Virus record (IMG/VR): IMGVR_UViG_3300042879_006196
Coordinates: 283,393-347,392 of that record
Strand: one strand, 5' to 3'
Length of the DNA stretch: 64,000 bases
Of this stretch, positions 607 to 64,000 are shown in pieces. The position numbers were made by a program, and so were the translations under genes. Each line of letters starts with the position of its first letter. Position 1 is the stretch's first letter. A model generated the notes under the pieces. It was not told the DNA's origin. It saw only the letters and a program-made list of their open reading frames with translations, and ran no database searches.

Positions 607-1421
607 TAATAATTCTTATACGTTTTTTCTTTGATATATTGCTTTAAATGACAGTCTTTCTTATAACCAACTCGCTTCACTGAACAATAATTTTCAATTA
701 ACTTTTGATCAATTTGTGATTCTGTAATGACTGAATTGTGATTATTTATTCTATTTGAAGGATCAAATGTGCCGAAAAATGGCGGAAACATCCAAGGTTG
801 ACCTGTTTTTAATGCCATGTAGCCTGGAAACAATTGTATTAAGTCTCTATTAGGGTATATATCGAATGCATTATCTAAATACATCTGGCACAATCTTACA
901 GCTTCATCAGTGAGAAATGCATACTCCCAGTTACTCACCATTGCATTTTCAACCTCTAAAAATAAGTTCATTCCTTTTTCATCCCAATTATGTGTTTCAT
1001 ATTGTATTAAAGGATTACCAATTGTAATGTTTGTAAAATCTTTTCCTGTATATGTAAAGTCCCAATTTGGGCAATTATAAAATTGCAAATAATTGACATT
1101 TCTTTCAGGATTAAAAGAATTGATCAAATATTGATTGGCTGAAAATAAACAAAGATGATCAAAATCTATAGGATTAGATCGTAAAAAATAAAGTAAATCA
1201 ACAAAAACTCCAAAAATAAATCTTGATTGATTTACAGGTTGCACCACATGTTTTAATTTTACATTTGGATGATCAACATATGGATGATTGATTATAATTT
1301 CGCAATTCTTGTCAAAATAATTAATATTTTCACACATGTCTTGCAAATCATCATAATCTTGATTTCTTGCATCTCCAAAAATCAAATACAGTGTTTTTGT
1401 TTTTTTTACACAATCTGACAT
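606..1421 (-). CDS. Hypothetical protein in glycosylation island (possible glycosyltransferase-like)
   Basis: 271-aa ORF tightly packed in the sugar cluster. Confidence 0.5.
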   Translation of the reverse strand: MSDCVKKTKTLYLIFGDARNQDYDDLQDMCENINYFDKNCEIIINHPYVDHPNVKLKHVVQPVNQSRFIFGVFVDLLYFLRSNPIDFDHLCLFSANQYLINSFNPERNVNYLQFYNCPNWDFTYTGKDFTNITIGNPLIQYETHNWDEKGMNLFLEVENAMVSNWEYAFLTDEAVRLCQMYLDNAFDIYPNRDLIQLFPGYMALKTGQPWMFPPFFGTFDPSNRINNHNSVITESQIDQKLIENYCSVKRVGYKKDCHLKQYIKEKTYKNY

Positions 1422-2296
1422 ATTTGTTCTAATCTTTCTCCCACAAGTGAAATTATGTCTTGCTCATATTTTACTACATATTCTTTCATTTTGTCATCTG
1501 AATCTAAATAATGCAAACAGCTTTTGATTGTTTTTTCTTCATTTTCTAGATTGTGTAACCATCTTCGCCAAGGAGCATTTTTTTCAATTTGTTCTAAGAA
1601 ATATGTTTTATCTTCAAGCTTTAAATTGTCAAAAATCACACTATTACTTATGTAAGTAAATTCAGGGGCGTAATTGTAAGCTGATATACCTAGATCGCAC
1701 AAGATTTTCAATTCTTCATCAGAATGAAAATCACAATTGTGTCTTTTCACTTTCACTTTATACTTTTCAGCTTTAGCCACGTAACATTTTGTTTTTTCAA
1801 TATCAATTGGCGAAATATTTTTACAATCAAAAACCACTGATCCTCCTTGGCACACAATATATTCAACTTTATCCAAAAAAGGTGTAATGTCGTTCAAAGC
1901 AATGTCAAACAACAATGTTGAAAATTTAGCAATAAAATCTTCTGTTCCAAATTCAAATTTTATATTTTTGTTAGCTTCAGTGAATTCATGCATCCATTTT
2001 ATACATTCTGAACTATAACGTCCAGAAAAGTACCAGGGATCTATATGAATCATATCAAATTTTTCAGCATCGAAGGCAATAATTTTTTTATCAAATTTTT
2101 CCATACAAAAATGATCTCTTTCAACTATTAGCTCAGATTTTAAGACTTGATCAATAATTGTTTTGCTTACATAACCATTTTCATGATTGAATTGCCGTTG
2201 TGAAAGAATAAAACCAATTGGTAATCCACTTTTTAAAATAGATTTAAGAATTGGTTCATTTACTGGAGATATAAATAGTTTAGGAAGTTTTTTCAT
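1406..2296 (-). CDS. Tagatose-bisphosphate aldolase/GatZ-KbaZ-like TIM-barrel protein
   Basis: ERDH, HIDPW, FEFGTE, HNCDF, NYAPEF motifs. Confidence 0.55.
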   Translation of the reverse strand: MKKLPKLFISPVNEPILKSILKSGLPIGFILSQRQFNHENGYVSKTIIDQVLKSELIVERDHFCMEKFDKKIIAFDAEKFDMIHIDPWYFSGRYSSECIKWMHEFTEANKNIKFEFGTEDFIAKFSTLLFDIALNDITPFLDKVEYIVCQGGSVVFDCKNISPIDIEKTKCYVAKAEKYKVKVKRHNCDFHSDEELKILCDLGISAYNYAPEFTYISNSVIFDNLKLEDKTYFLEQIEKNAPWRRWLHNLENEEKTIKSCLHYLDSDDKMKEYVVKYEQDIISLVGERLEQICQIV

Positions 2297-2303
2297 TTGA
2301 TTT

Positions 2304-3842
2304 CTACTCGTTCATTGTCATAAGTTTATTTAAGTTGTACCAACCCATACAATAAAGCAATGTAGCTTCTTCACCTGTGTGTACTCCAGATGAAGATAAT
2401 TGTATTAGCGCCACTATAGTGTCAATAACATTCATGTTTATGTTTCTTTGTAAACAAAACGCCTCTAACGTTTTCATTAGTTCAAGATTTTTTTCTGGAG
2501 TTCCAGCATCAAAAAAACATTGATTGTTTTCAAGCTTCACATAAAATTTATTGTTTTTAATCGCTTCATGATCAAATATCAGATTGTGTTTCATTTTAGC
2601 AATATCATAATACCAATCACCTTTACTATTGCCAAAACCTTCTCTCCAATCAATTAAAATAAACCCTTCATTTGTTTTAATAACATTTTCAAAAACCAAA
2701 TCTCCATGAGCAATGCACTGTTGTGTTGGAAACTTTTCAAATAGTTCGCTTGCGATGTTTATAAGTTCCGATAAAGGTTTTACTTTTCTAAAGTTTATGT
2801 TTTGAATTTCAGAAAAATTGTTTTTTTTGTTTTTATGAAAGTTTTCTATTCTTTTGGAAGCTTTGTCAATGTAAAAATTTTTGAAAAAATTCAAACTAGT
2901 GTGTTTATATTTTTGCCATAAATTGTTTTCACACCAAATTAAAAAATTTTCAAGCAAATCTTGTGTTAATATTTTTGATAAAGTAATTCCCTTTACAAAA
3001 TTGTAGTAAATGAAATTATTTTTTGAATAACATTCAGGAGCACATGAAGATAACACCTTGCTTCTTTCATAAAGTTTTTTTACTTTTTCTTTATCACTGA
3101 AAAATTTAACAATTTTTTCATTAACATAATATGTTTCTTCATTCATTTTTGGCAACACGCAAATCTCTTGTTTGAATTGTTTTTGCGCACTTCTTAAAGC
3201 AATAAAATTACCAATATCTATCCAGTTTTTTGTTTCAACAAAGTCAATGTTCATTTGTTGAAGAATGTGTGCGTCAGATAAATTTTGTGTTTTATTTTTA
3301 TTCAATTCTTTTATTGTTAATTCTTTAAATAAATCTATATTTTCAATATAAGCCACACCTGTATAGCAAAATTCTCCCTCTTTGGCAGGCGTATCTTCGA
3401 TTTTTTTTGATTCATCATTCAATTCGCTTATTTTTCTATATTGGTTGCTTACAAATGTTTTTGAAAAAACGGCAAAATCATTACTTTTATGAGGCACATT
3501 TGAAATATAAGTATCACAAGCATTGTAATAAAAAGGTTTATCAATCACGTCGAATGTGCATGATAAAGAGTAAAGCAATGAAGATTGTGTGCTTTCATAG
3601 TCATCTACTTCAACAAATTCTATATTTAAATCAGAGTGGTTAATCTCAATATAATCTTTAACTTGCTCTTTTAAATACCCTAAAGTTATAATAAATTTTG
3701 AAGCTCCTGGATAACTATCAAATATGTGCGAAATTATAGCTTTATCGCCAAGTTTGATCAAAGCTTTGTTTAGGAAATCAGTAATTGGCTTCAATCTTGA
3801 ACCAGTTCCTGAGCAAGTAATTACCACGTCAAAATTTTTCAT
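2304..3842 (-). CDS. NTP-transferase fused to APH/choline-kinase-like phosphotransferase (LicC-LicA-like)
   Basis: N-terminal GTGSRLKPIT..NKAL; C-terminal HGDLVFEN and LIDW kinase motifs. Confidence 0.75.
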   Translation of the reverse strand: MKNFDVVITCSGTGSRLKPITDFLNKALIKLGDKAIISHIFDSYPGASKFIITLGYLKEQVKDYIEINHSDLNIEFVEVDDYESTQSSLLYSLSCTFDVIDKPFYYNACDTYISNVPHKSNDFAVFSKTFVSNQYRKISELNDESKKIEDTPAKEGEFCYTGVAYIENIDLFKELTIKELNKNKTQNLSDAHILQQMNIDFVETKNWIDIGNFIALRSAQKQFKQEICVLPKMNEETYYVNEKIVKFFSDKEKVKKLYERSKVLSSCAPECYSKNNFIYYNFVKGITLSKILTQDLLENFLIWCENNLWQKYKHTSLNFFKNFYIDKASKRIENFHKNKKNNFSEIQNINFRKVKPLSELINIASELFEKFPTQQCIAHGDLVFENVIKTNEGFILIDWREGFGNSKGDWYYDIAKMKHNLIFDHEAIKNNKFYVKLENNQCFFDAGTPEKNLELMKTLEAFCLQRNINMNVIDTIVALIQLSSSGVHTGEEATLLYCMGWYNLNKLMTMNE

Positions 3843-3882
3843 TCATGCATATTATACATAAACTTCGATGTACAATAAAATA

Positions 3883-4557
3883 ATGATTGTAATTTGCACT
3901 CATAAAAGTCCAGATATTTTAGAAAGATTTTTATCTTCAATCAAAAACCATCAAACTGAAAATCATAAAATTTTGATTGTAGAAACATCTGATAGCCAAG
4001 ATTCTAAAGTTTTATCTGAAAAGTATCAATGCTTATTTTCAAATACAAATTTGAAATATGAAATTGGCGCTTATGTGCATGCAATTAATTTATATCCTGA
4101 TGAAGATGAATATTTTTTATTTCAAGACTCATTAGAAATAGTCAATGATAATTGGGAAGATAATTTCAGGAAATTGTCTCAAGGAGAAAAGCTTGTCACA
4201 TTGTGTGGATATTTTTTAAAAGATGATCCATGCCCTGGGTGCGGAGTTGAAGAATTTGAGTCGTTATTTAATTGTAAGTTTCCAACCGAAGAAGGCTATG
4301 CAGTGATGACGAATAGCTTTTATATTACACAATCTGCAAAACAAAAACTTAAAAATTTTGGTATTGATAGGTTATTTGCTCATGAAAAAAACGACACTTA
4401 TAAAACAGAAAGAATTTTAGGAGCAATGGCACACTATACTTGTGGTATAGCAGATTTATCAGAACTTTTAGGAAATTATATTTGGCAAGTAGATCAGTTT
4501 TTGCCTGGTTTTGGTTTTACAAAATTTATTTTAAAACATATCAGAAAAAGACAATGA
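3883..4557 (+). CDS. Glycosyltransferase-like protein
   Basis: GT2-like N-terminus, YEIGA and FLFQDS motifs. Start moved to the ATG 11 nt after TGTACA. Confidence 0.55.
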   Translation: MIVICTHKSPDILERFLSSIKNHQTENHKILIVETSDSQDSKVLSEKYQCLFSNTNLKYEIGAYVHAINLYPDEDEYFLFQDSLEIVNDNWEDNFRKLSQGEKLVTLCGYFLKDDPCPGCGVEEFESLFNCKFPTEEGYAVMTNSFYITQSAKQKLKNFGIDRLFAHEKNDTYKTERILGAMAHYTCGIADLSELLGNYIWQVDQFLPGFGFTKFILKHIRKRQ

Positions 4558-7825: not shown

Positions 7826-7827
7826 AT

Positions 7828-8457
7828 TTAATAAAACCCATTAACTATAATTGAAGGTGAGTCATCACAAGAACACACTGGAGGATAAACAGCATAAATC
7901 TTTTTATCACTCCTCATGATTACACCATCCGCTGTATTCATTTTTTTAACTTGCGATTCATAAAGATCACAAGCTATATTAGACGTTCTGATAACATAAG
8001 CTGAAGTTCCAGCTCTTGTATATTTATCAGTGTACGGACTTGCTAAATGCGGAGTAGTGTACAAATCACAATCAGCTGTGAACAATGCCAAAATATCATA
8101 ATCAGAATTTAAAGCAATTTCTAAATTTGATAATGTATTAAAAACAGAGTCGTCCTCTAAAATCAAACAATTACTTAAATTTTCATTAGCAATTATTTGA
8201 TAAATCAACATGTGTGCCAAAGCACAAGCAACTTGACCATCACTTAATGGATCAAGCAAAGGAATATCATTAGGTATACTTGGTAGATTATGTACGGCTA
8301 AGCCATCTTTAGAAACACAATTCAAACCTTGCATTACAAATTGACACAATCTATAATTTAAACCTTCCCATCTTTCATTAAATGCTTGAAATCTTTGAGA
8401 CTCAGGGTGAGCAATTACAAATACGTTTTCAAAATAATTATTGATTATATGATTCAT
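7828..8457 (-). CDS. Glycosyltransferase family 25-like
   Basis: GQVACALAH, LILEDD, TSAY. Confidence 0.75.
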   Translation of the reverse strand: MNHIINNYFENVFVIAHPESQRFQAFNERWEGLNYRLCQFVMQGLNCVSKDGLAVHNLPSIPNDIPLLDPLSDGQVACALAHMLIYQIIANENLSNCLILEDDSVFNTLSNLEIALNSDYDILALFTADCDLYTTPHLASPYTDKYTRAGTSAYVIRTSNIACDLYESQVKKMNTADGVIMRSDKKIYAVYPPVCSCDDSPSIIVNGFY

Positions 8458-9164
8458 TGTTCACCGAAGTAATTATTATAAAAGTTTTTTACCAAATTTA
8501 ACGATTCTTTGCTCATTTCATTTAAAACATATTCTTTTTGTTTAAGAAATTTAACAGCAGAATGGGAATTCATAGTAAATTTATATTTACTCCTCACTCT
8601 TTTTGACCATTCAACATCTTCTGCCTCACCCCATATCAAATTTTCATTAAGCGGAAATTCTTGCATTACATTTTTTTTTGCCACCCAATAAAACCCAGGA
8701 ATGTACATAATTTTTGAAAACTCTTGATCATAAGGTAAGAGTTGTTCGGCATTTGGCAACTGATAATCTTGATAATAAACCAACCAATCTATATTTCTTT
8801 TTCCATCGAGATTGTGTACACGGTTCATGCACACTTGAAAGTCATTACCAAACTTTAAAAATCCTTCATACCAGCCATTTTCTAAAACAATATAATCATG
8901 CATTAAAACTATATTTTCATATTTTGCGTTTTCTACAATCAAATTTTTTTTCTTTGTGATCCATCCAGTTTTTTGTGTTTCGTCAAAATGAATATAATCA
9001 TCATAGAGGTTTTCACATAACCAATCTTTGTTCAAATTATCATAGATATCTCCAATGAATATTATTTGTTTATTTGGTATTTTCTGATTTTTAATTTGAT
9101 TATAAATAATTGGATGTAAGTGTTTATTTTCTTTAGTCACACAAATTCCAAAAGTAAAATCCAT
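8454..9164 (-). CDS. Glycosyltransferase (GT2-like)
   Basis: WITKKKN, VLMHDY, GEAEDVEWS. Confidence 0.7.
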   Translation of the reverse strand: MDFTFGICVTKENKHLHPIIYNQIKNQKIPNKQIIFIGDIYDNLNKDWLCENLYDDYIHFDETQKTGWITKKKNLIVENAKYENIVLMHDYIVLENGWYEGFLKFGNDFQVCMNRVHNLDGKRNIDWLVYYQDYQLPNAEQLLPYDQEFSKIMYIPGFYWVAKKNVMQEFPLNENLIWGEAEDVEWSKRVRSKYKFTMNSHSAVKFLKQKEYVLNEMSKESLNLVKNFYNNYFGEQ

Positions 9165-9814: not shown

Positions 9815-10614
9815 TTACATATATAGAAGGCGGATTAGGCAACATGTTATTTCAACTTTGCTTCAGCTATGCTAAGGCAAAAGAAAATAACACGACATTT
9901 CATACATTGAATTATAGAGAAAATCTTGATATTATCAAGGATAAACATAAAGCTGATATTGAATCTTATGAAAAAACGATTCTCAGAAATTTCAGTATTT
10001 CTCCTCCTCCACTGCTGTATCAAGCACAAATTCAACATTTTTGCCCTTTTAATTTTGAAGAAATTCCTTATGAGCCAGATTGTTACAATTTGTATAAAGG
10101 GTATTTTCAATCAGAAAAGTATTTTGAAAAAAGCCAAGAAGATTTAGCACAAATTTTTCAACCAACCGAAGAAATCATTGACCACATGAAAGAAAAATAC
10201 CCTTTTCTTTTTACTTTAGATTGTGTGGCTTTGCACATTAGACGAGGAGATTATTTGCAATTACCAAATCATCATCCAATTGTTCCCACCGATCATTATC
10301 ATAAAGCATTAAAGAAACTTGGTGATTTTGAAAAAATCTTAGTGTTTACAAATGATATGGATTGGTGCTACAAGAATTTTGTAGAATCGCGAGCTATTTT
10401 CATTGAAGAGTCAGATTGGATGAGTTTATATCTTATGAGCTTTTGCACTAAGCATGTTATTGCTAATTCATCTTTTTCTTGGTGGGGTGCAAAATTAGCT
10501 GAGATGTTTTTCCCAGAAAAAAACATCGAAGTAGTTGCTCCTCCAGTGTGGTTTGGACCTGCTGTTGATGGCGATGAAAAAGATTTAGTTCCATCAAGAT
10601 GGATGAAAGTGTAA
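9808..10614 (+). CDS. Alpha-1,2-fucosyltransferase (GT11)
   Basis: GGLGNMLFQ, GYFQSEKYF, HIRRGDY, IANSSFSWWGA. Confidence 0.9.
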   Translation: MVVTYIEGGLGNMLFQLCFSYAKAKENNTTFHTLNYRENLDIIKDKHKADIESYEKTILRNFSISPPPLLYQAQIQHFCPFNFEEIPYEPDCYNLYKGYFQSEKYFEKSQEDLAQIFQPTEEIIDHMKEKYPFLFTLDCVALHIRRGDYLQLPNHHPIVPTDHYHKALKKLGDFEKILVFTNDMDWCYKNFVESRAIFIEESDWMSLYLMSFCTKHVIANSSFSWWGAKLAEMFFPEKNIEVVAPPVWFGPAVDGDEKDLVPSRWMKV

Positions 10615-11258
10615 TGACTAAATTAGATTTGTTTAATAACACACATGTAATATCTTTAGCACATAGATTGGATAGAAGAAGTGTCATAGCTAAGCAATTT
10701 GAGTTATATCAAATTCCTTATTCTTTTTTTGATGCTATCAATGGACATGAATTAGATTATAATGGTCCGTTGTTAAAAGGCGAGGAGGGTGTAAGATTAT
10801 CACATATTGAGTTATTAAACAAATCAATCAAAAACAATGAAAAATCACTTTTTATTTTTGAAGATGATGTTGAGTTTTCAGAAAGCTTTAACGAAGATTT
10901 ACACAGAGCTTTAAATGTAGTTCCTGATAATTTTGATATGTTATATTTGGGGGCTTCACATCATCTAAAGCCAGAATTAGTAAAAGATAACTTATATAAA
11001 ATTTCACATTCTTACACCGCACATGCACTTTGTATAAAAAACAACCTTTTTGCACCACTCAGAGACACAATCTCAAACAATAAAAATTTACCAGTGGATG
11101 TAATTTATGCATTAGTTCAACCGCAAGTAAATGCATTTGCTATTTATCCACATCTTGCATGGCAATTCAACAGTTATTCAGACATACAAAACAAATTTGT
11201 TGATTATGAATTCCTTAAAAAAGAATTTGTTAGATTTGAAAATCAAACTATTCTTTGA
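10614..11258 (+). CDS. Glycosyltransferase family 25
   Basis: ISL..RLDRR, FDAING, SH, IFEDD, YLG. Confidence 0.8.
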   Translation: MTKLDLFNNTHVISLAHRLDRRSVIAKQFELYQIPYSFFDAINGHELDYNGPLLKGEEGVRLSHIELLNKSIKNNEKSLFIFEDDVEFSESFNEDLHRALNVVPDNFDMLYLGASHHLKPELVKDNLYKISHSYTAHALCIKNNLFAPLRDTISNNKNLPVDVIYALVQPQVNAFAIYPHLAWQFNSYSDIQNKFVDYEFLKKEFVRFENQTIL

Positions 11259-15419: not shown

Positions 15420-15803
15420 ATGAATGTTAAAAAAGTGAAGTGGTTTACTGAAGAATTAGTAAAATCTAATCCAGATTGTGTATTTATTTTTGGTGACAAT
15501 CTTTTAAAAGTGGGTAAAGGTGGTCAAGCTATAATACGTGACCATTTCAACGCTTATGGAATTCCAACAAAAAAGCACCCTTCAATGTCACAAAATTCAT
15601 TTTTTTATGATAGTGAGTATGATGATAATTGCCAAATTATTTTATCTGCAATAGATAATATCCCAAAGAATTTTTCACAGATTGTGTTCCCTATAGATGG
15701 ACTGGGGACTGGACTTGCAAAACTTAATGTTACAGCTCCAAAAACATATAAATTTCTGATTGATACAATAAATAATAGATTCGGAGATATATATGAATAC
15801 TGA
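15420..15803 (+). CDS. Conserved phage protein (FGDN...GGQA..R...GIPTK family)
   Basis: Motifs VFIFGDNL, GKGGQAIIR, AYGIPTKK, GLGTGLA. Confidence 0.65.
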   Translation: MNVKKVKWFTEELVKSNPDCVFIFGDNLLKVGKGGQAIIRDHFNAYGIPTKKHPSMSQNSFFYDSEYDDNCQIILSAIDNIPKNFSQIVFPIDGLGTGLAKLNVTAPKTYKFLIDTINNRFGDIYEY

Positions 15804-19055: not shown

Positions 19056-19104
19056 AATCTTATTTTAAAAGAAATTTAATCAAAAACCTACCGTATATAT
19101 AATA

Positions 19105-19779: not shown

Positions 19780-19796
19780 ATACCTAAAAACAGATT

Positions 19797-44993: not shown

Positions 44994-45382
44994 ATGAAAC
45001 TATTTGCTATATTTTTGTACCTATTTCTTTTTCTTTATTTTTTATTATTTTAGTAGGTTTTCTAAATCACTTTTCATTAATGGAAAACATTGAAGAAGAA
45101 GAAAAGAAAAAAACAATTAAAATGAGAGCAGAGGAAGAGAGAAAAAGACTTGAAATAGAAGCCGAAAAACTAAACTTGCACAACAAGCAATTAAAGCTTC
45201 ACCTAAAGATTTTGTTGAGCCAGTTCATGGAAAAAAGAATTAAAATAGAAGGAGAGAAAGCTCAACAGAAAGCTCGCCAGATTGCTCAACTTCAAGAAGA
45301 ACAACAAAGTCTTAGAATAAAGGCAGAAGAAGCTGAAGCAGAAAGAACTAGAACACAATCTCAGATTTGGGTGAATGAATGA
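44990..45382 (+). CDS. QIWV-array membrane protein 5
   Basis: One TM plus long coiled coil. Confidence 0.75.
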   Translation: MNETICYIFVPISFSLFFIILVGFLNHFSLMENIEEEEKKKTIKMRAEEERKRLEIEAEKLNLHNKQLKLHLKILLSQFMEKRIKIEGEKAQQKARQIAQLQEEQQSLRIKAEEAEAERTRTQSQIWVNE

Positions 45383-45657: not shown

Positions 45658-46632
45658 ATGTTGAACAAAAATTTTTCAAACGAAGAGCTTCTTGAGCTTA
45701 GACGAAAGCACAAAGAAAAACTTGCACTTCAGGAGCAAGAAACCCAGGAATTGCAAAGAAGAAAAATAGAAGCAGAAAAAAAAGAAGAAGCTGACCGATT
45801 GACATTAACAATTAACAAACTCGTTAATTCATTATTTATTGAGTTTAACAAATCCTTTCAAAGATTTATCCTTACTGAGGATAAAAAATTTGCAATTCAA
45901 GTGGATAGTTCACATGCTGTTTCAACTCTGCTTCCTGGTAGTGAAAAATATAGCAATGTACCTTTTTTGATGCATGAAGCACTAGTTCGAAAAATCAACG
46001 ATACTTACCCAAAGCTCAAATTTTTGAGCTACGTACAACAAAACGCAAATAATACCTACTTTTCAATAGTTTTCGAGCCAATATTGCATAACATTATTCC
46101 CTGTGACATAATCTCAGAAACTCTGCCGAGATGGAAATCTATAAAGACTCTGCCACAATCTGGAAGTGTGTATGTATGTTACACTAATGTAACTGGCGAA
46201 ATAAGTATTCATAAATTTGAAGGAATTGATTTAAGTTCTTTAATCAAAAAGCCAGATTTGCTTCCCACTTTTTGGTTAGAAAAATTACCCAGTTTTAAGG
46301 CAAACATTTTAAGTGCTATAAACATAGTTGGTATGTTGTCATTATTATCAAATATTCCTTTGGTTGTAATTTCAAAGAATTTATTCATCGGGCTTGCTCT
46401 TGGCGCTATTGAAAGTATTGCAATGTTTGTTGCCAATCAAGTGCTCAAAAGCGACAGTATTGAGTCACAATATTCAGAAGATTTATCAAACTACCTTAAA
46501 AGTAATGAATATCTGGCTAATAAAGAGATTGTGTCTTGGTATGATGAATTACCAAAAGATTTTGTAGTAGATGAAAAAACAACCAAACAAAAAGCCTTAG
46601 CTGAGTTTGATAACATCGCAAACACAATCTAA
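45658..46632 (+). CDS. Hypothetical membrane protein
   Basis: N-terminal coiled coil, C-terminal TM pair. Confidence 0.55.
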   Translation: MLNKNFSNEELLELRRKHKEKLALQEQETQELQRRKIEAEKKEEADRLTLTINKLVNSLFIEFNKSFQRFILTEDKKFAIQVDSSHAVSTLLPGSEKYSNVPFLMHEALVRKINDTYPKLKFLSYVQQNANNTYFSIVFEPILHNIIPCDIISETLPRWKSIKTLPQSGSVYVCYTNVTGEISIHKFEGIDLSSLIKKPDLLPTFWLEKLPSFKANILSAINIVGMLSLLSNIPLVVISKNLFIGLALGAIESIAMFVANQVLKSDSIESQYSEDLSNYLKSNEYLANKEIVSWYDELPKDFVVDEKTTKQKALAEFDNIANTI

Positions 46633-46697: not shown

Positions 46698-48110
46698 ATG
46701 TTGAAGCCCATTTACACAATCTCATTAATATCTATTACAGCTATGTCAAATGCTCAATCTGCAGATTTGTCGTTGCCTGTTGGTAAATCTTCCTTTACCA
46801 TAGATTCAAATAAAAAAATAAATTGGGCTGGATCAAATATGAAATATGATTTTGGCAATTTGAAATATGCTGGGACATTTGCAAATAATTCTCAAGTGCA
46901 CAATTTCAATGCAAAGCTAAGTGATGTCACAATGAGCTATACAAGTTCTGCTCCAAAAAACACAGTGGGTATCACTTATCGCGGACTTACATTCACTTCC
47001 GAGGATTTCAATCGAAATGAAGTGCAGAATGTATTTGCCTCAAAAGTATTGGTAGATAACAAAAATACATTATCTTATCAACAAAAACAATTGTCTATTT
47101 CAATGTCAAAGACTATAGGTAGAAATTTTAATTATGATAGCTATTCTTTTGCTTCCAAGGGGACAAAGATTGATTATGTGGCGTCTGAGAAGCCTTTAAT
47201 GATGACAGACGCTTGGAATCGCCCCTATGCCTCAGAAACGTCTATTATGTTTCAATCTCCTACATTCTCAGCACGAATAATGGACAATTATGATGATGTT
47301 CTTTATTCAACAAAAGGTTTCTCCATTAGGACTATTCATCATCCTAAAAGATTTGAGAATACATTAAACTATTCTAATAAAAACTATAATCTATCTTACG
47401 TTCAATTTAATGATGGATACTCTAAAAATTTCTTGAATATAAATGGCAAAGATTTCAAGTTTAAAATGGCAAACGATGGTGAAACTAATATTAGTCAATT
47501 AGAAACAAAAGACACCACAATAGCACATGGTAACAATCAAAACTTTGTTCAATCAAAAATTGATAAAATTGAATATAGATTGTCTGAAAGTACAGGCAAA
47601 ATTAACTATGATGTTAAAGTGGGAAATATTGGCGTAAGAGATGGCGACACATATGGAATTGTCCAACCGATTAAAAATGTTTCTGTAAAAGCATCATCTG
47701 AAAACGGTGTGGAACAAGTAAGTTATAATACATCTGTAAATAAAACAAATATATCTTTAAAATACAATAATCAATTTGATGTTTATGATTTTTATTTCAA
47801 ACAAAATGCATTTAGTGTTTATGAAAACTCATTCTCTTTGATAGGTCAGAATAGATCACAATTTAAAGATTCGTTTTCTTTCAGTTTGGTTAATCCAAAA
47901 TTTAATTTTGCGTCGGATGTTATTAATGACATTTACGCTTTGACATTCAAAAACAGCAATAATTTTGTGCTATCAATGATTAAAGATCAAAAACAAAATT
48001 TTCTTGGATTGACAAATACAGGTAAATTTGGAAATCTTGGCGTTCAGTATAATATGAACACGCAAATGTTCGACAGATTGTCATTTAACTATGTTATCAA
48101 ATTTCATTGA
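46698..48110 (+). CDS. Exported beta-strand-rich protein, possible outer-membrane protein
   Basis: Signal peptide SNA|Q; C-terminus FNYVIKFH. Confidence 0.55.
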   Translation: MLKPIYTISLISITAMSNAQSADLSLPVGKSSFTIDSNKKINWAGSNMKYDFGNLKYAGTFANNSQVHNFNAKLSDVTMSYTSSAPKNTVGITYRGLTFTSEDFNRNEVQNVFASKVLVDNKNTLSYQQKQLSISMSKTIGRNFNYDSYSFASKGTKIDYVASEKPLMMTDAWNRPYASETSIMFQSPTFSARIMDNYDDVLYSTKGFSIRTIHHPKRFENTLNYSNKNYNLSYVQFNDGYSKNFLNINGKDFKFKMANDGETNISQLETKDTTIAHGNNQNFVQSKIDKIEYRLSESTGKINYDVKVGNIGVRDGDTYGIVQPIKNVSVKASSENGVEQVSYNTSVNKTNISLKYNNQFDVYDFYFKQNAFSVYENSFSLIGQNRSQFKDSFSFSLVNPKFNFASDVINDIYALTFKNSNNFVLSMIKDQKQNFLGLTNTGKFGNLGVQYNMNTQMFDRLSFNYVIKFH

Positions 48111-50231: not shown

Positions 50232-50280
50232 TATTTATATTTTACATCTAAAACACAATCTCACCTTTTTTAAATAAAAA

Positions 50281-50324: not shown

Positions 50325-52190
50325 TTAATCAACTACTTCAGCGTCCACAACATTAGGATCTATCACTTCTTCATTAGACCCTTGAACATTTTGGTACAAT
50401 ACTTCTGAAAGTTTATGTGAAACTTGCAGTAGGTTGTCTTTAGCTGTTTGAATTTGATTTTTGTCATTTGTTTTTAAAGCTTCTTTAGTTTTTTCTAAAG
50501 CTTCTTGAACATCATCAATCAAGTTTTGCTCTGCTTTATCTTTCGACATTTCAATCGTGGTTTCTATACTAGAGCACAAAGTTTCAGTCTCATTCTTCAA
50601 GAGAATAAACTCTTTTGCTTCTTTATCTGCTTCAGCATATTCTTCAGCCTCTTTGATCATTCGATCAATTTCATCTTTTTCCAAGTTCGAAGATTGTGTG
50701 ATTGTGATACTTTGCTCTTTGCCAGTTCCAAGATCTTTTGCTTTCACACTTAAAATACCATTGGCATCTAAAGAAAACTCCACTTCGATTTGTGGGATTC
50801 TTGCTGGCGCAGGAGCAATCCCCGAAAGATTGAACATACCCAAGCTTTTGTTGTCTTTGGCAATAGGTCTTTCGCCTTGTAAGATATGAATAGTAACCTC
50901 AGTCTGATTATTAACAGCAGTGGTATATACACTCTTTTTCTGTGTCGGAATAGTCGTGTTTTTTTCAATAAGCACATCAACCATTCCTCCATTTACTTCA
51001 ACACCCAAACTCAAAGGAGTGACATCTAAAAGAATAATGTCCTTGACATCTCCTGCCAAAATGCCTCCTTGAACTGCCGCTCCAAGAGCCACTGCCTCAT
51101 CAGGATTCACACCTTTAGATGGCTCTAAGCCTGTAATTTCCTTAATCAAACTTTGAACACAAGGGATTCGTGAACTACCACCAACAAGAATTACTTCATT
51201 AATCTTAGATTTGTCCACACCTTCCTTGAGAGCATTTAGCAATGGTTTTTTGATTCGATCCAAGAGGGGTTTCACCATAGATTCAAAATTAGCCTTAGTC
51301 AATTCTAAATCAACATGCAATGGATTTCCATCCACTGCTGTAATGTAAGGAAGATTTATTGATGTGGTTGCCTGTGAAGAAAGTTCAATTTTAGCTTTTT
51401 CTGAAGCTTCTTTCACTCTTTGCATTGCCGCTGAATCTTTGCTGATATCTACACCAGTAGATTTTTTTGTTTCAGAAACAATCCATTCCGATACTTTATT
51501 ATCAAAATCATCTCCACCTAAATGACTATCTCCTGAAGTGCTCAAAACCTCAAATGTTCCATCACCAATATCGAGAATAGAAACATCAAAAGTTCCTCCA
51601 CCAAGGTCGAAAACCAAAATATAACCTTCTTTATCCTTGCTTACACCATAAGCCAAAGCCGCAGCTGTTGGCTCATTGATGATTCTCACTACTTCAAGCC
51701 CAGCAATTTCTCCTGCATTTTTTGTAGCTTGTCTTTGTGAGTCATCAAAGTAAGCAGGGACAGTAATCACTGCTTTACTAACAGTGGTTCCTAAGTAACT
51801 TTCAGCATCCACTTTAATTTTTTGAAGAACTGCCGCTGAAATTTCTTCTGGTGTAAAATCTTTACCCACCGCAGGAATTTCAATTACAGCTAAGCCCTTT
51901 TTGTTTTTCTTAACCTTATAACTAACTTTACCCACTTCATTAGAAATCTCATCATACTTGTGTCCCATAAAACGCTTGACAGATGAGATTGTGTTTTTGT
52001 GATTAGTGACAGCACTCCGTTTTGCAGAAATGCCAACAATCCGCTCACCATCTTTTTTCCACGATACTACGGAAGGAATAGTTCTATTTCCTTCAGATGA
52101 CGAAATCACTTTAGCTTCACCAGCTTCCATGATAGCAACGCACGAATTAGTCGTGCCAAGGTCGATTCCTAATATGTATTCTTTTGCCAT
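50325..52190 (-). CDS. dnaK: Chaperone DnaK (Hsp70)
   Basis: GIDLGTTNS, TVPAYF, DLGGGTFD, LVGGSSRIP, DAEVVD; start set 12 nt after TGTATA. Confidence 0.97.
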   Translation of the reverse strand: MAKEYILGIDLGTTNSCVAIMEAGEAKVISSSEGNRTIPSVVSWKKDGERIVGISAKRSAVTNHKNTISSVKRFMGHKYDEISNEVGKVSYKVKKNKKGLAVIEIPAVGKDFTPEEISAAVLQKIKVDAESYLGTTVSKAVITVPAYFDDSQRQATKNAGEIAGLEVVRIINEPTAAALAYGVSKDKEGYILVFDLGGGTFDVSILDIGDGTFEVLSTSGDSHLGGDDFDNKVSEWIVSETKKSTGVDISKDSAAMQRVKEASEKAKIELSSQATTSINLPYITAVDGNPLHVDLELTKANFESMVKPLLDRIKKPLLNALKEGVDKSKINEVILVGGSSRIPCVQSLIKEITGLEPSKGVNPDEAVALGAAVQGGILAGDVKDIILLDVTPLSLGVEVNGGMVDVLIEKNTTIPTQKKSVYTTAVNNQTEVTIHILQGERPIAKDNKSLGMFNLSGIAPAPARIPQIEVEFSLDANGILSVKAKDLGTGKEQSITITQSSNLEKDEIDRMIKEAEEYAEADKEAKEFILLKNETETLCSSIETTIEMSKDKAEQNLIDDVQEALEKTKEALKTNDKNQIQTAKDNLLQVSHKLSEVLYQNVQGSNEEVIDPNVVDAEVVD

Positions 52191-52976: not shown

Positions 52977-53317
52977 AAAATACATTTTTAATTGTAACAA
53001 TATTAGCTTTTAATCTAGTTGGATGTGGCAATTTGAAGCAATCAAGTTCAAAGACCACTGTCTTACCAAGTGGAATTAAACTTAAAATTGAAAATAAACC
53101 TAACAATTCAATAACTGAACCATATCTTACATTCGCTACCTATTACATACCCGCAGACCAAAAATTTGTTCACTTCAGAAAATATGAGTTTTCTTATGAG
53201 GGTCAAATGACAACCAGAATGCGGAGACAGGATGATGCTTATGATGTCTATACAATTGCTTCATGTGGTCCTAAAATAACTATTGTAGAGGAAAAGCCCA
53301 TTGGAGAAATAAAATGA
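52973..53317 (+). CDS. Lipoprotein, paralog A
   Basis: LVGC lipobox; paralog of 54070. Confidence 0.7.
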   Translation: MKNTFLIVTILAFNLVGCGNLKQSSSKTTVLPSGIKLKIENKPNNSITEPYLTFATYYIPADQKFVHFRKYEFSYEGQMTTRMRRQDDAYDVYTIASCGPKITIVEEKPIGEIK

Positions 53318-53622
53318 CACAATCTGAATTTTTAGAAGAAAAACAAAAAAAGAAAAAAAAATTTGAGAAACTTTTTTTGGAGGAATTTAATTCTGAATTG
53401 GCAAAATACTTCAGAACAGCATGCCCTAGAATTTATGTTGACACAAGTTATTATTTCAGTAAAAAAGAAGCGCTTGCAATTATTGCGTCTGAGCATCCTG
53501 ATTTAAAATTAAGATTGCGATTTTATCGTCAAGTTGATAACATGTACACACGACATAGTTTACAGTATAAATTTACTCCAAAAAGAAAATTCACAATCTT
53601 TGGGCGTGAGGTTTGGATTTAA
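53314..53622 (+). CDS. Hypothetical protein
   Basis: ATGA overlap. Confidence 0.55.
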   Translation: MTQSEFLEEKQKKKKKFEKLFLEEFNSELAKYFRTACPRIYVDTSYYFSKKEALAIIASEHPDLKLRLRFYRQVDNMYTRHSLQYKFTPKRKFTIFGREVWI

Positions 53623-54069: not shown

Positions 54070-54462
54070 ATGAAAAATACCTTTTTAATTATAGCAACAC
54101 TGGCTTTTACTTTGGTTGGGTGTGAAAATACAAGGCAATCAAGTTCAAAAACCATTGACTTACCCACGGGAATCAAACTTAAACTTGAAAAGATACCCAA
54201 CAAGTGTAATTCATATGATCCATATGTTATAGTTGCTACGTATTACATTCCTTCAGACCAAAAATTTGTTAATTTCAAACAATTTGAGCTTTCTTGGAGA
54301 GGCGAAAAATATTATGAGGATTATGAGGGTCAAATCACAACCAGAAAACGAACAAAGGATGATGGCTATGATACCTATACAATTGCTACAGGAGCTCAAT
54401 TTGAAGCTGCATGCAGTCCTGCGATAACGATAATAGAAGAAAAGCCTTTTGGAGAAAAATGA
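54070..54462 (+). CDS. Lipoprotein, paralog B
   Basis: LVGC lipobox; followed by an MTQSE remnant of the 53314 gene. Confidence 0.7.
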   Translation: MKNTFLIIATLAFTLVGCENTRQSSSKTIDLPTGIKLKLEKIPNKCNSYDPYVIVATYYIPSDQKFVNFKQFELSWRGEKYYEDYEGQITTRKRTKDDGYDTYTIATGAQFEAACSPAITIIEEKPFGEK

Positions 54463-54522
54463 CACAATCTGAATTATTTATTACTTAAAGACCGTATATG
54501 GAAAGAGGAATGAGAACAAATC

Positions 54523-55415: not shown

Positions 55416-55729
55416 AAAAAGCAAGTCGTGCACCAATATATACGGCGTGTGTATATCCAGATTTGGCTGAAATTTGTCGCGAGGCTGGCTATGCATTAGC
55501 AGTGCATGGTTCACTTGCCAGAGATTTTGACCTTGTTGCTATACCTTGGGTAGAAAATGTTATTATCCCAGAAATAGTTGTGCAGGAAATAACAAAAAAA
55601 TTCTCTGTCAAACAAATAGGCGAGCCAGAGTGTAAATTACATGGGAGATTGTGTTATACCTTAGCATGGATGGGTGAAGCGTTTATAGATTTTTCGTTCA
55701 TGCCTGTGCAAACACAAGAATTAAAATGA
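55412..55729 (+). CDS. Conserved phage protein, minimal NTase-like
   Basis: GYALAVHGSLARDFDLVAIPW. Confidence 0.65.
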   Translation: MKKASRAPIYTACVYPDLAEICREAGYALAVHGSLARDFDLVAIPWVENVIIPEIVVQEITKKFSVKQIGEPECKLHGRLCYTLAWMGEAFIDFSFMPVQTQELK

Positions 55730-57693: not shown

Positions 57694-57955
57694 AATCATT
57701 ATTGAAAATATAAGTTCGTTGCCTGATGACGAGGCAGTAAGATTAGTACAACGAGTAATGTCTGACGGTTTTCTTAGCAAAGAAACAATACAGGGAGAAA
57801 AAAATATCCCAAAGTATTGCCACGTCACTTCTTTCAAGGAAATGTCATCTTGTGTCAGACATATTGTGGAAGCAAGATCACGCAAAACAAAAACTTCTGC
57901 CTATTCATTCAGAGTTTACACTTCTTATATAGATTGTGTGGAGGAGGAATCATAA
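57686..57955 (+). CDS. Hypothetical protein, paralog of 56009
   Basis: Direct similarity. Confidence 0.7.
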   Translation: MSRIIIENISSLPDDEAVRLVQRVMSDGFLSKETIQGEKNIPKYCHVTSFKEMSSCVRHIVEARSRKTKTSAYSFRVYTSYIDCVEEES

Positions 57956-59315: not shown

Positions 59316-59535
59316 AGGTATATTGTAAATGATGATGGCTCTGTTGAGTACGATTGGATGTTTGACAAAAATGCATTTTCGTTGACCATATATCCAGATG
59401 GCAAAGTAGGATATGCTTACTTGATTGGAAATATTTCTGATTGCGGTGTTTCTTATTTGGAAGATGGCAATTTGCCTGATTTTATTACAAACAAGATTCA
59501 AGAACTTTCCACACAATCTGAGCGTATAAAAATTA

Positions 59536-59706: not shown

Positions 59707-60160
59707 TAAACTCGAAACCAAAACAATACTTTGTGCCGCGTTTCCTGGCACTGGCAAAACATTTATCTGTAATAATTCAAAACTAAAAGCAATTGAAGTG
59801 GAATTTTGGCAGTATGAAAGCCAAAAACAATACATTCAAGATATTAAAGCATTGATAGGTGAAGTAGATTTTGTATTCCTATCCACTGAAATAGATGGTT
59901 TACAGCTTTTGCATAATGAAGGTCTTGAAATTTTCCTTGTTTATCCTCAAAAGAATTTGAGGAATGAATATTTAGACAGATATATTGAAAGAGATAACCC
60001 ATATGATTTCATAGGCACGATGATGAAATTTTGGGACACTACTATTGAAAAACTTCAAGAGCAAAAGTATTGTAAACACTTCGTTTTAGGAAAAAATCAA
60101 TATTTGAGCGATATTCTTCATTTACTCAGTAAACCCTCCACACAATCTGAGCGTATATAA
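59699..60160 (+). CDS. P-loop-like conserved phage protein
   Basis: AAFPGTGKT; LVYP...EYLDRY..R; start uncertain. Confidence 0.6.
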   Translation: MISKLETKTILCAAFPGTGKTFICNNSKLKAIEVEFWQYESQKQYIQDIKALIGEVDFVFLSTEIDGLQLLHNEGLEIFLVYPQKNLRNEYLDRYIERDNPYDFIGTMMKFWDTTIEKLQEQKYCKHFVLGKNQYLSDILHLLSKPSTQSERI

Positions 60161-60500: not shown

Positions 60501-60539
60501 TTTTCGAACCTTCCACACAATCTGAGCGTATAAAATAAT

Positions 60540-60794: not shown

Positions 60795-60887
60795 TGTTAA
60801 CAATTTCGTGGCTAGGAGGTGAAAATATAATTTACCACAAGCTCTGTAGTTTGCAACTTTCCACACAATCTGAGCGTATAAAATAAT

Positions 60888-63243: not shown

Positions 63244-63247
63244 TAAT

Positions 63248-63275
63248 TGGGCGGTTTACCGCCCATTTTTCTTTT
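63248..63275 (+). terminator. Intrinsic terminator
   Basis: TGGGCGGT-tt-ACCGCCCA followed by T run. Confidence 0.8.
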
Positions 63276-63286
63276 ATAATTACTTT

Positions 63287-64000
63287 ATGTTTGTCGAATT
63301 ACCCAGAAATCAAACCTGTGACATCATTTTTTTAACAAATACCGCTGATGATGATGTTTTTCAAATGACAAATACAGCTATACAAAGTCTGTATGCATCG
63401 GAAGAAAATAATAATTTTCGAACTATTTTAGTAGAATCTGGTAATCAATCTTACAAATATAATGTTAATGTTACTGTGCCATACGAAGGTGATTTTAGTT
63501 ATAACAAAGCTTTAAATATGGCATTTGAACACATTGAATCAGATTGTGTTGGTGTGTTTAATAATGATGTAATTTTTACAGAGAATTGGTTTAGTTATAT
63601 GCGATATTACATGGATATTTTCAATTTGGATTCTGCCTCTCCTTGGTGTCCAATTCCCCAAGTTGGACCAAACCAAATAGCTCAACAAAAAATCCTAAGT
63701 TACCCCGATCATTCTGCAATTGTTGGGCATGAAGTATTAACAATCTTCGCTGGTTGGGGCTGGTTAATGAAGAAAGATACTTTACAAAAATTAATTCCTC
63801 AACCTGAGGATCTGACATTTTGGTTTGTAGATAATCACATGTCTCTTCAATTACAAACAATGGGGCTAAAACATGCTACTGTAACAGCAAGTAAAGTATA
63901 TCATTTGGGGCAAAAATCTTATGCTCATATATCTCCTGAAAAATTATATGCAATGACTCATGGGCTTCAGGATAAATTTGTATCGAAATGGTCAAATTGA
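63287..64000 (+). CDS. Glycosyltransferase family 2
   Basis: FSYNKALN, FNNDVIF, FWFVDN, VYHLG. Confidence 0.75.
   Translation: MFVELPRNQTCDIIFLTNTADDDVFQMTNTAIQSLYASEENNNFRTILVESGNQSYKYNVNVTVPYEGDFSYNKALNMAFEHIESDCVGVFNNDVIFTENWFSYMRYYMDIFNLDSASPWCPIPQVGPNQIAQQKILSYPDHSAIVGHEVLTIFAGWGWLMKKDTLQKLIPQPEDLTFWFVDNHMSLQLQTMGLKHATVTASKVYHLGQKSYAHISPEKLYAMTHGLQDKFVSKWSN

What the first reader, a model, noticed from the sequence alone, without database searches (positions are those of the whole stretch)
1408..63549. Genome-wide 9-mer tag ACACAATCT, about 60-fold over-represented and embedded in genes in every frame
Seen: exact ACACAATCT at 1408, 4327, 8344, 11065, 19052, 19232, 19397, 23571, 23688, 25810, 29649, 29985, 32759, 33330, 35926, 37277, 43510, 45353, 46622, 46714, 50253, 53317, 54462, 59511, 60140, 60515, 60863. 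The reverse complement AGATTGTGT occurs at 1548, 2581, 3582, 8809, 10218, 15473, 15679, 19586, 19792, 29039, 29953, 31290, 33582, 36278, 38411, 43371, 43458, 43571, 46526, 50691, 51986, 52518, 55646, 57931, 63541. Many 1-mismatch copies also occur. That is about one per 1.2 kb, while a zero-order model at ~30% GC predicts about 0.8 copies in total. It is non-palindromic and strand-balanced. It is read in different frames (TQS, HNL, xTI, DCV, xIV, RLC recur in unrelated proteins) and it sits inside conserved genes (dnaK, thyX, purA, dinB) and the tmRNA. None was found in either TnpB element. Known: this pattern is the signature of DNA-level selected motifs such as Neisseria DUS, Pasteurellaceae USS, Chi and HIP1. 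Inference: a phage self-recognition or DNA-handling system, such as sites for a genome-coating, packaging or compartment protein, a Chi-like anti-nuclease or recombination signal, or an uptake signal. I do not recognise this motif from described systems.
Basis: partly seen in the sequence, partly recalled or inferred. Interest (0 to 1): 0.9.

Follow-up and report, generated by a model that had tools for sequence, protein, structure and literature searches.

The report
Clade-specific 9-base phage genome tag
A lake-water jumbo phage and its close relatives carry the exact 9-base word ACACAATCT about once per kilobase on both strands and in every reading frame; selection keeps it there at the DNA level, no sampled candidate host genome has it, and no described system explains it.

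Summary
All 52 window copies are exact (about 1 expected). The whole 347-kb phage genome has 336 copies, making this its commonest 9-mer. Outside one repeat array there are 261 copies against 4-7 expected. Inside genes there are 179, against 28 after synonymous shuffling and 5 after codon shuffling.

The word is very sharp: almost all one-mismatch variants are at most 5x enriched. All six frame and orientation classes are enriched 20-80x. Orientation is neutral to transcription and shows no positional polarity, and spacing is Poisson.

Related phages with portal identity of about 68% or more have the same top word. Relatives at 66% or less have none and no substitute word. Orthologous sites are retained 4-6 times more often than arbitrary 9-mers, yet most sites are lineage-specific. 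Some are made by silent changes and some by amino-acid changes.

About 777 sampled bacterial genomes, including candidate host lineages, are at background.

In this phage the word is also built into early-promoter cassettes, the header of about 65 tandem tiny genes, and the starts of a paralog family.

The orientation tests argue against promoter, ops/RfaH-like, stoperator-like and RNA readings. My best reading is a phage-autonomous, copy-number-dependent self tag. Its reader is unidentified.

The parts
1408..1416 (+). site; antisense in ORF 606-1421(-), read as SDCV
1548..1556 (-). site; sense in ORF 1406-2296(-), LHNL
2581..2589 (-). site; sense in ORF 2304-3842(-), KHNL
3582..3590 (-). site; sense in ORF 2304-3842(-), TQS
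4327..4335 (+). site; sense, TQS, ORF 3868-4557(+)
8344..8352 (+). site; antisense, RLC, ORF 7828-8457(-)
8809..8817 (-). site; sense, VHNL, ORF 8454-9164(-)
10218..10226 (-). site; antisense, LDCV, in glycosyltransferase-11 gene 9808-10614(+)
11065..11073 (+). site; sense, DTIS, ORF 10599-11258(+)
15473..15481 (-). site; antisense, PDCV, ORF 15420-15803(+)
15679..15687 (-). site; antisense, QIVF, ORF 15420-15803(+)
19052..19060 (+). site; at the start edge of the 834-aa gene (16551-19055, -)
19232..19240 (+). site; sense, DTIL, in dNMP-kinase-like gene 19105-19779(+)
19397..19405 (+). site; sense, DTIY, same gene; the ortholog reads DPDAIYII (GCA ATT)
19586..19594 (-). site; antisense, QIVS, same gene
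19792..19800 (-). site overlapping the GTG start of the 941-aa phrog_3532-family gene; the conserved block of four paralogs begins exactly here
23571..23579 (+). site; sense, TQS, ORF 23220-23789(+)
23688..23696 (+). site; sense, TQS, same ORF
25810..25818 (+). site; antisense, QIVS, ORF 25733-26269(-)
29039..29047 (-). site; antisense, QIVW, in purA 28105-29064(+)
29649..29657 (+). site; sense, LHNL, in thyX 29083-29919(+); made largely by synonymous codon choice relative to orthologs
29953..29961 (-). site; antisense, EDCV, ORF 29897-30757(+)
29985..29993 (+). site; sense, HTIC, same ORF
31290..31298 (-). site; antisense, TDCV, ORF 30763-31695(+)
32759..32767 (+). site; sense, NTIF, in dinB 32479-33702(+)
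33330..33338 (+). site; sense, THNL, in dinB
33582..33590 (-). site; antisense, SDCV, in dinB
35926..35934 (+). site; sense, TQS, in sigma-like gene 35710-36408(+)
36278..36286 (-). site; antisense, QIVC, same gene
37277..37285 (+). site; sense, KHNL, in ECF-type sigma gene 37008-37595(+)
38411..38419 (-). site inside the tmRNA gene (38142-38526, +), read as AGAUUGUGU in the RNA
43371..43379 (-). site; antisense, PDCV, in HAD/PNKP-like gene 43156-43677(+), which carries 4 sites
43458..43466 (-). site; antisense, EDCV, same gene
43510..43518 (+). site; sense, TQS, same gene
43571..43579 (-). site; antisense, EIVY, same gene
45353..45361 (+). site; sense, TQS, ORF 44990-45382(+)
46526..46534 (-). 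site; antisense, EIVS, ORF 45658-46632(+)
46622..46630 (+). site; sense, NTI*, at the stop of ORF 45658-46632(+), just upstream of an early-type promoter box
46714..46722 (+). site; sense, YTIS, at the start of ORF 46698-48110(+)
50253..50261 (+). site; non-coding, downstream of dnaK
50691..50699 (-). site; sense, TQS, in dnaK (50325-52205, -); created by Gly->Gln in the conserved T(I/V)TGSSN motif and shared with motif-bearing relative L391
51986..51994 (-). site; sense, NTIS, in dnaK; shared with L391
52518..52526 (-). site; antisense, RLC, ORF 52509-52976(+)
53317..53325 (+). site; sense, TQS, ORF 53314-53622(+)
54462..54470 (+). site; non-coding or gene edge
55646..55654 (-). site; antisense, RLC, ORF 55412-55729(+)
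57931..57939 (-). site; non-coding, just outside the second TnpB gene (58037-59200, -)
59511..59519 (+). site; antisense, RLC, ORF 59265-59591(-)
60140..60148 (+). site in a repeated non-coding cassette, CC-ACACAATCT-GAGCG-TATA(T/A)AA, upstream of a small gene
60515..60523 (+). site in the same cassette, second copy
60863..60871 (+). site in the same cassette, third copy
63541..63549 (-). site; antisense, SDCV, ORF 63287-64000(+)

Best explanation
ACACAATCT, with weaker G and A at positions 10-11, is a genome-wide self tag of one subclade of freshwater jumbo phages. Shown: selection at the DNA level installs the word wherever the sequence tolerates it and then maintains it. Density is about 2 per kb in non-coding DNA, 0.77 per kb in poorly conserved genes and 0.39 per kb in family-core genes. 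Selection acts on copy number, not on position, strand or reading frame. Inferred: a factor encoded by this phage clade reads the word either as double-stranded DNA or symmetrically on both strands, and so tells phage DNA (about 1 site per kb) from host DNA (about 1 per 100-400 kb). The specific mechanism I consider most likely, at about 0.3 on its own, is Chi-like logic: the word attenuates or blocks a processive DNA-degrading or DNA-tracking machine that can enter from either direction, sparing phage DNA while host DNA is consumed for nucleotides. A sequence-specific protective or organising DNA-binding protein is nearly as likely. The copies inside early-promoter spacers, tiny-gene headers and paralog starts in this phage are secondary. 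They are tolerant, duplicating sequence that was recruited to carry the tag, and they may add a regulatory side effect.
For: Enrichment survives every null model. The word is sharp, 35x for the exact 9-mer against at most 5x for almost all one-mismatch variants. All six frame/orientation classes are enriched 20-80x; the expected sense fraction from coding constraints is 0.68 and the observed is 0.58. There is no positional polarity and spacing is Poisson, CV 1.1. The same word is the top 9-mer in independently assembled relatives G001-G003, L018/L019, L391 and L392. It is absent from relatives at 66% portal identity or less, which have no substitute word. Orthologous sites are retained at 19%, 41% and 50% against 4-10% for any 9-mer, while most sites are lineage-specific. 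Gains come by silent change (ThyX, KLVNTILAAR) and by amino-acid change (DnaK Gly->Gln). Density follows constraint. Mobile genes (two TnpB, one LAGLIDADG) have 0 sites against 2.9 expected. About 777 bacterial genomes are at background. In relative G002 the early promoters keep their architecture but mostly lack the exact word, so the dispersed copies are the conserved trait. The phage is rich in nucleotide-salvage genes.
Against: No reader protein was identified. The phage has no UvrD/RecB-type helicase-nuclease, only a small Cas4-like PD-(D/E)XK protein. The contrast of clade-specific genes gave mostly metabolic genes and unknowns. The stereotyped positions are equally compatible with a real operator role: 25 promoter spacers plus about 13 upstream copies, including inverted pairs exactly 21 bp apart. 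Sites are not evenly spaced, which weakens a model requiring every segment to be protected. The host is unknown, and host sampling was sparse relative to bacterial diversity.
Confidence: 0.4

Rival explanations
1. The word is the operator of a global transcription regulator: an early-gene shut-off or silencing protein that binds in promoter spacers and at dispersed sites, like stoperators.
For: The word fills the -35/-10 spacer of 25 of about 60 early promoters. About 13 further copies sit just upstream of the -35 box, in several promoters forming inverted pairs exactly 21 bp apart with the spacer copy. It also sits next to -10-like elements in other cassettes. Non-coding clusters hold several sites in both orientations. 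The analogy is to stoperators, which are asymmetric, monomer-bound and occur about once per 2 kb.
Against: About 180 sites lie inside genes in any frame and orientation, some at the cost of amino-acid changes. There is no orientation rule relative to transcription. Outside the cassette, sites have no positional preference near gene starts. Promoter spacers in G002 mostly lack the word although that genome is rich in it. No integrase or ParB was found, so there is no sign of lysogeny.
Confidence: 0.2
2. The word is an ops-like element read in the non-template strand by the phage's NusG/RfaH-like paralog (window 36416-36943), marking phage transcription units for antitermination.
For: A NusG-family gene (NGN + KOW) sits next to an ECF-type sigma gene in a conserved cassette. 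It is absent from the distant relatives G008 and G010. From general knowledge, NusG paralogs are known readers of short asymmetric DNA words (ops; TTNTTT in Bacillus subtilis). The G/T-rich strand CAGATTGTGTGG lies at the 5' ends of the array genes and the phrog_3532 paralogs.
Against: The word is neutral to orientation relative to transcription, with both orientations enriched 20-80x. The NusG-like gene is also present in motif-free relatives at 63% and 56% identity.
Confidence: 0.07
3. The word mimics a host signal: the host's Chi sequence or a DNA-uptake sequence.
For: Its statistics resemble USS/DUS and Chi: about one per kb, sharp, in all frames, with turnover. From memory, phage P1 is enriched in host Chi.
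Against: There is no enrichment in 401 Bacteroidota, 251 Actinomycetota, 121 genomes of the class holding the closest cellular NusG, or 7 other genomes. Sister phages presumably infecting related hosts lack the word. There is no replichore-type polarity.
Confidence: 0.1
4. The word is a by-product of a biased repair or gene-conversion drive, with no function of its own.
For: Clade-specific onset. Excess conservation together with gains is also what a drive would produce. A Vsr-like DUF559 endonuclease domain is fused to the portal.
Against: The portal fusion is also present in motif-free relatives. Known repair biases give far weaker enrichment (general knowledge). No mechanism is known that would drive a 9-bp word symmetrically on both strands. 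Amino-acid changes in conserved proteins imply a strong force.
Confidence: 0.1
5. The word is an initiator box, like a DnaA box: clustered copies form origins and dispersed copies titrate a phage replication initiator.
For: It is a 9-bp asymmetric box. Non-coding clusters contain sites in both orientations, tandem repeats and hairpins at genome 33.2-34.4 kb. Copies occur in promoters.
Against: From general knowledge, DnaA boxes are not 35x enriched inside genes. No initiator was identified, and the replication module itself is poor in sites.
Confidence: 0.08

Closest known systems
Stoperators and operators of Cluster A mycobacteriophages (L5 gp71-type repressor)
   Same: An asymmetric, sharply defined, clade-specific word. 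It occurs at an early promoter and is dispersed through the phage genome at about one per 1-2 kb (PMC9283540).
   Different: Stoperators are 13-mers, number 20-35 per genome, lie in short intergenic gaps, and are strictly oriented with transcription in temperate phages. Here the word is a 9-mer with 336 copies, mostly intragenic, neutral in orientation, and there are no lysogeny genes.
Chi sites (RecBCD/AddAB)
   Same: A short, sharp, asymmetric word whose benefit depends on number. It is tolerated in any frame, and one strand is G/T-rich.
   Different: Chi is a host-encoded system, and its sites are skewed with replication direction (general knowledge). Here there is no polarity, no host counterpart was found, and the phage has no RecB/UvrD enzyme.
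DNA uptake sequences (Pasteurellaceae USS, Neisseriaceae DUS)
   Same: Nearly identical statistics: a 9-12-mer at about one per kb, on both strands, in all frames, with turnover plus conservation.
   Different: Those belong to competent bacteria and accumulate through transformation (general knowledge). This is a virulent-looking phage, the word was not found enriched in any sampled bacterium, and sites do not form inverted-pair terminators.
ops element / RfaH and other NusG paralogs
   Same: A short asymmetric DNA word read by an NGN domain, and the phage encodes a NusG-family protein.
   Different: ops is strand-specific and occurs once per operon leader (general knowledge). Here both orientations are equally enriched within genes.
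KOPS/SRS/TRS words of FtsK/SpoIIIE/TraB translocases
   Same: Over-represented 8-bp asymmetric words read on double-stranded DNA.
   Different: Those are strongly polar along the replicon (general knowledge). This word has no polarity.

Membership tests
Chi (RecBCD/AddAB) | The word is over-represented in the host genome | tested here: not met
   About 777 bacterial genomes are at background. The host itself is unidentified, so this applies only to those sampled.
Chi (RecBCD/AddAB) | Orientation is skewed with replication direction or toward DNA ends | tested here: not met
   Strands are balanced in every 10-kb bin.
Chi (RecBCD/AddAB) | A cognate helicase-nuclease is present | tested here: not met
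   The phage has no UvrD-helicase family match and only a 234-aa PD-(D/E)XK protein. The host enzyme is not testable.
USS/DUS uptake sequences | Resides in, and is enriched in, a naturally competent bacterial genome | tested here: not met
   This is a virus record, and no sampled bacterium is enriched.
USS/DUS uptake sequences | Frequent inverted pairs acting as terminators | tested here: not met
   Convergent pairs are 45-200 bp apart. The terminators are separate CCCCTCC...GGAGGGG hairpins.
Stoperator/operator system | Site orientation correlates with the direction of transcription | tested here: not met
   Genic sense:antisense is 108:73, no more sense-biased than the codon-shuffle null (0.58 observed, 0.68 expected). 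Intergenic sites are 9:22.
Stoperator/operator system | Sites lie in promoters and short intergenic gaps | tested here: not met
   About 180 of 261 non-array sites are intragenic, although 39 are in promoter cassettes.
Stoperator/operator system | An L5 gp71-like two-domain repressor is encoded | not tested
   No profile for the Stoperator domain was available to search with.
ops / NusG-paralog recruitment site | Functions in one strand, the non-template strand, of transcribed DNA | tested here: not met
   Both orientations are enriched 20-80x.
ops / NusG-paralog recruitment site | A specialised NusG paralog is encoded | tested here: met
   Window 36416-36943 matches NGN at 1.8e-22 plus KOW. 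However, the gene is also present in motif-free relatives.
Promoter element | Fixed distance and orientation to gene starts, with partner -10/-35 elements | tested here: not met
   This holds only for the early cassette (peaks at -22 and -43). The 235 dispersed sites have no conserved flank and no excess of TATAAT.
KOPS/SRS-type translocase guide | Strong strand polarity along the replicon | tested here: not met
Repeat element (MITE/REP-like) | Conserved flanks beyond the core | tested here: not met
   Information content drops to zero beyond positions 10-11 for the dispersed class.

The most novel reading that the evidence does not exclude
A phage-autonomous system for telling self DNA from non-self DNA. 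One subclade of jumbo phages has written a private 9-bp password into its own genome about once per kb, even changing conserved protein residues to do so. A phage-encoded DNA-processing or DNA-protecting machine spares or marks password-bearing DNA, while host and competitor DNA is left unprotected. This would be a viral counterpart of Chi that is independent of any host signal.
Probability: 0.25. Interest if true: 0.9.

Novelty: new variant of a known kind. Interest (0 to 1): 0.8.

Why it matters
Dispersed, DNA-level selected words such as Chi, USS/DUS and KOPS have each revealed a major DNA-handling machine, and all belong to cells. Here the same statistical signature belongs to a virus lineage and has no detectable host counterpart. 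It arose within a datable branch, between about 66% and 68% portal identity, and it is strong enough to override protein conservation. That makes the question of what reads it directly testable: the word is known exactly, the phages on either side of the gain are available for gene contrast, and the phage is abundant in lake metagenomes. If it is a self-marking system, it would be a new principle of phage genome defence or host takeover. It would also give a simple sequence marker for assigning contigs to this clade.

Tried and rejected
- **Alternative genetic code:** no gain in coding density, so code 11 was kept.
- **Close relatives by DNA or single proteins:** none in INPHARED or IMG/VR. 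Relatives came from portal homologs and a two-copy pattern scan.
- **Promoter box or array header in IMG/VR:** not found.
- **Literature search for the word:** only primers and GFP sequence.
- **Read evidence:** only contigs are held. The runs labelled RNA contain a 92-95% identical strain and are probably DNA. No molecule ends or joints coincide with sites.
- **Gene-content contrast of motif-bearing versus motif-free genomes:** 51 ORFs, mostly metabolic. The two most conserved unknowns were uninformative, one LolA-like and one of unknown fold.
- **phrog_3532 repeat proteins:** helical repeats like those of giant-virus proteins, with no sign of DNA reading.
- **Rfam search of the RNA-like region at genome 33.65-33.95 kb:** no family, fold z-score -2.5.
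- **Host assignment:** ambiguous. AdoHcyase is closest to Actinomycetota and Cyanobacteriota, DnaK is equidistant, and NusG is closest to PVC-type bacteria.
- **Even-coverage, hairpin-pair and polarity models:** rejected.
- **Assembly or adapter artefact:** rejected, because the word is in frame in conserved genes and recurs in independent assemblies.

Full report
**Observation**

All 52 coordinates are exact copies of ACACAATCT, 27 on the + strand and 25 on the - strand. Dinucleotide-preserving shuffles give a mean of 1.06 and a maximum of 4. The window is the last 64 kb of a single 347,392-bp virus contig with 33.6% GC, 23 tRNAs and a tmRNA. It uses the standard genetic code. The gene content is that of a jumbo phage: RIIA, DNA polymerase, DnaB-like helicase, RecJ, RNR, portal, NAMPT, two DnaK, DinB, PurA, ThyX and two TnpB.

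Genome-wide the word occurs 336 times and is the most frequent 9-mer.

**Two kinds of copy**

About 75 copies lie at genome 14-33 kb, all in one orientation. There, about 65 tandem tiny ORFs of 50-65 aa each begin ATGATTAATACAGATTGTGTGGA, encoding MINTDCV.

A further 39 copies lie in a stereotyped early-promoter cassette, present about 60 times at genome 34-68 kb. The cassette reads: terminator hairpin, TTTTCCAGGTTTAAC, 8-9 nt, GATTATAAT, AGAT, ATG. That layout implies leaderless mRNAs. The word fills the spacer in 25 of these promoters, and an inverted copy precedes the -35 box in about 13.

The remaining 220 or so copies are dispersed. They share only the core plus G (54%) and A (55%) at positions 10-11, with no partner element.

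**Statistics**

- Outside the array there are 261 copies, against 4.2-7.4 expected under Markov orders 0-3.
- In CDS there are 179 copies, against 28.2 +/- 4.6 after synonymous shuffling and 5.1 +/- 2.5 after codon-order shuffling.
- The exact word is 35x enriched. Nearly all one-mismatch variants are at most 5x; the exception is ACACGATCT at 22x.
- All six frame and orientation classes are enriched 20-80x. Coding constraints predict a sense fraction of 0.68 and the observed fraction is 0.58, so orientation is neutral to transcription.
- There is no positional polarity.
- Spacing is Poisson, CV 1.1.
- Apart from the promoter cassette, sites show no preference relative to gene starts or ends.
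- Density falls as constraint rises: about 2 per kb in non-coding DNA, 0.77 per kb in poorly conserved ORFs and 0.39 per kb in family-core ORFs. Three mobile genes have 0 sites against 2.9 expected.

**Relatives**

Portal homologs define a large freshwater metagenomic family. Contigs with portal identity of about 68% or more have the same word as their top 9-mer, with the same extension and the same tolerated variant. These are L018/L019, G001, G002 and G003, and loci L391 and L392 found through the NusG-like protein.

Relatives at 66% or less have none: L020, L021/L393, L394, G006, G008, G009 and G010. G008 and G010 were scanned whole and have no comparable dispersed word. G007 (65%) has 9 copies, all on one strand, mostly in paralogous genes.

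Against orthologs of 65-71% amino-acid identity, G000 sites are retained at 9/48, 7/17 and 3/6. The baselines for any 9-mer are 4.1%, 10.5% and 8.0% (p = 1e-4 to 9e-3). Most sites are nonetheless lineage-specific.

Sites are gained in two ways:

- **By silent change.** ThyX reads HNL as CAC AAT CTG where an ortholog has CAT AAT TTG. KLVNTILAAR uses ATC TTA where the relative has ATT CTA.
- **By amino-acid change.** DnaK T(I/V)TGSSN has become TITQSSN, shared with L391. The dNMP kinase DPDAIYII has become DPDTIYII.

The relatives lack this phage's CCAGGTTTAA box and the MINTDCV header. G002's early promoters keep the same architecture but mostly lack the exact word. The motif-free relative has tiny-ORF arrays that start MIKL, without the word. 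So the dispersed tag is the conserved trait, and the embedded contexts are secondary.

**Host mimicry**

The word is at background level, at most about 60 copies per genome and similar to the reversed control, in:

- 5 assorted bacterial genomes;
- 401 evenly drawn Bacteroidota;
- 251 Actinomycetota. This sample includes one unpublished genome, G439, with a single copy. The claim does not depend on it, and nothing from it may be published without its depositors' permission;
- the two genomes with the closest cellular NusG, both PVC-like by gene context;
- 121 genomes of the class of one of them, G666.

The host remains unidentified.

**Candidate readers**

The phage has no UvrD/RecB-type enzyme, no tyrosine integrase and no ParB. 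It encodes three sigma-family proteins and a NusG-family protein. The cassette radical-SAM / sigma-like / NusG-like / ECF-sigma lies at window 35.0-37.6 kb. That cassette is also present in motif-free relatives. In addition, orientation neutrality argues against a non-template-strand reader.

**Interpretation**

The evidence excludes:

- chance, codon or protein artefacts, repeat elements and assembly artefacts;
- a promoter, an RNA motif, an ops-like element, or a stoperator-like element by the orientation rule confirmed in PMC9283540;
- a polar guide such as KOPS or Chi.

What remains is a strand-symmetric, number-dependent, DNA-level function specific to this phage clade. I commit to a self tag read by a clade-specific factor. 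The most likely mechanism is Chi-like protection from a DNA-degrading or DNA-tracking machine, and a protective or organising DNA-binding protein is nearly as likely. These mechanistic steps are inference. A global regulator, a drive, host mimicry and an initiator box remain as rivals.

Noticed in passing
genome 14.4-33.2 kb (L001:14400-20000, L002:1-15200), outside the window: A tandem array of about 65 tiny ORFs (50-65 aa). Each starts MINTDCV(E/K)V, is rich in QVWxQV-type 4-residue repeats, and ends KVFR* or KVWYD* with the stop overlapping the next ATG (ATGATTAA). GC skew reaches +0.45. The motif-free relative L393 has similar arrays starting MIKL. Function unknown.
   Followed up: partly
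genome 34-68 kb; in the window at 36951, 46647 and 52303: About 60 copies of a stereotyped cassette: terminator hairpin, TTTTCCAGGTTTAAC, 8-9 nt, GATTATAAT, AGAT, ATG. This implies leaderless early mRNAs. Shine-Dalgarno sequences are essentially absent genome-wide and leaders are A-rich.
   Followed up: partly
window 35034-37595: A conserved cassette of radical-SAM, sigma-like (232 aa), NusG-family (176 aa, NGN + KOW) and ECF-type sigma genes, driven in part by an early promoter. A phage-encoded NusG paralog is unusual. The closest cellular NusG proteins come from PVC-type bacteria (48-50%).
   Followed up: partly
L002:15180-15950 (genome 33.18-33.95 kb): A non-coding region with a 46-bp tandem repeat (x4) carrying AGATTGTGT-T-AGATTGTGG and more sites in both orientations. 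GC-rich hairpins follow, then a promoter-like AGATTGTGTATCGTATAAT. After that come about 300 nt of possibly structured RNA ending in a terminator. No Rfam family matches and the fold z-score is -2.5.
   Followed up: partly
L008:10544-12901 (portal gene) and homologs P0001-P0120: The portal protein carries a C-terminal DUF559 / Vsr-like endonuclease domain (PF04480, PF18741) throughout the family.
   Followed up: no
window 19797-22622; genome 68910, 72591 and 74901: Four clade-specific paralogs of a helical-repeat protein (phrog_3532). Their conserved 5' block of about 65 nt begins exactly at the word, and the ORF appears to start at the GTG inside it (VWYRYCRLIIAGKEHII).
   Followed up: partly
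window 42032-43153; 33782-34999; 58037-59200: A double-motif LAGLIDADG homing endonuclease gene and two TnpB (OrfB_IS605) genes. None contains the word.
   Followed up: partly
window 600-12850: A sugar-nucleotide and glycan gene cluster on both strands: nucleotidyltransferase, SAM methyltransferases, a GT11 fucosyltransferase-like gene and a GDP-mannose dehydratase-like gene. S-adenosylhomocysteine hydrolase follows at 13558-14790.
   Followed up: no
whole record G000: IMG/VR labels the record 'provirus' (99% complete), but no tyrosine integrase, ParB or terminal repeat was found. The label may reflect the many host-like genes.
   Followed up: partly
G010 (L372-L390): The complete 379-kb distant relative has its own moderately enriched word, ATATATCCGAT (about 40-56 copies, 12-16x). 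It is probably a promoter element. Its contexts were not examined.
   Followed up: no
window 24211-25242: A phage gene with a prepilin-type N-terminal methylation motif (N_methyl). A similar gene occurs in relative L020. This fits a host with type IV pilin-like systems, such as PVC bacteria.
   Followed up: no
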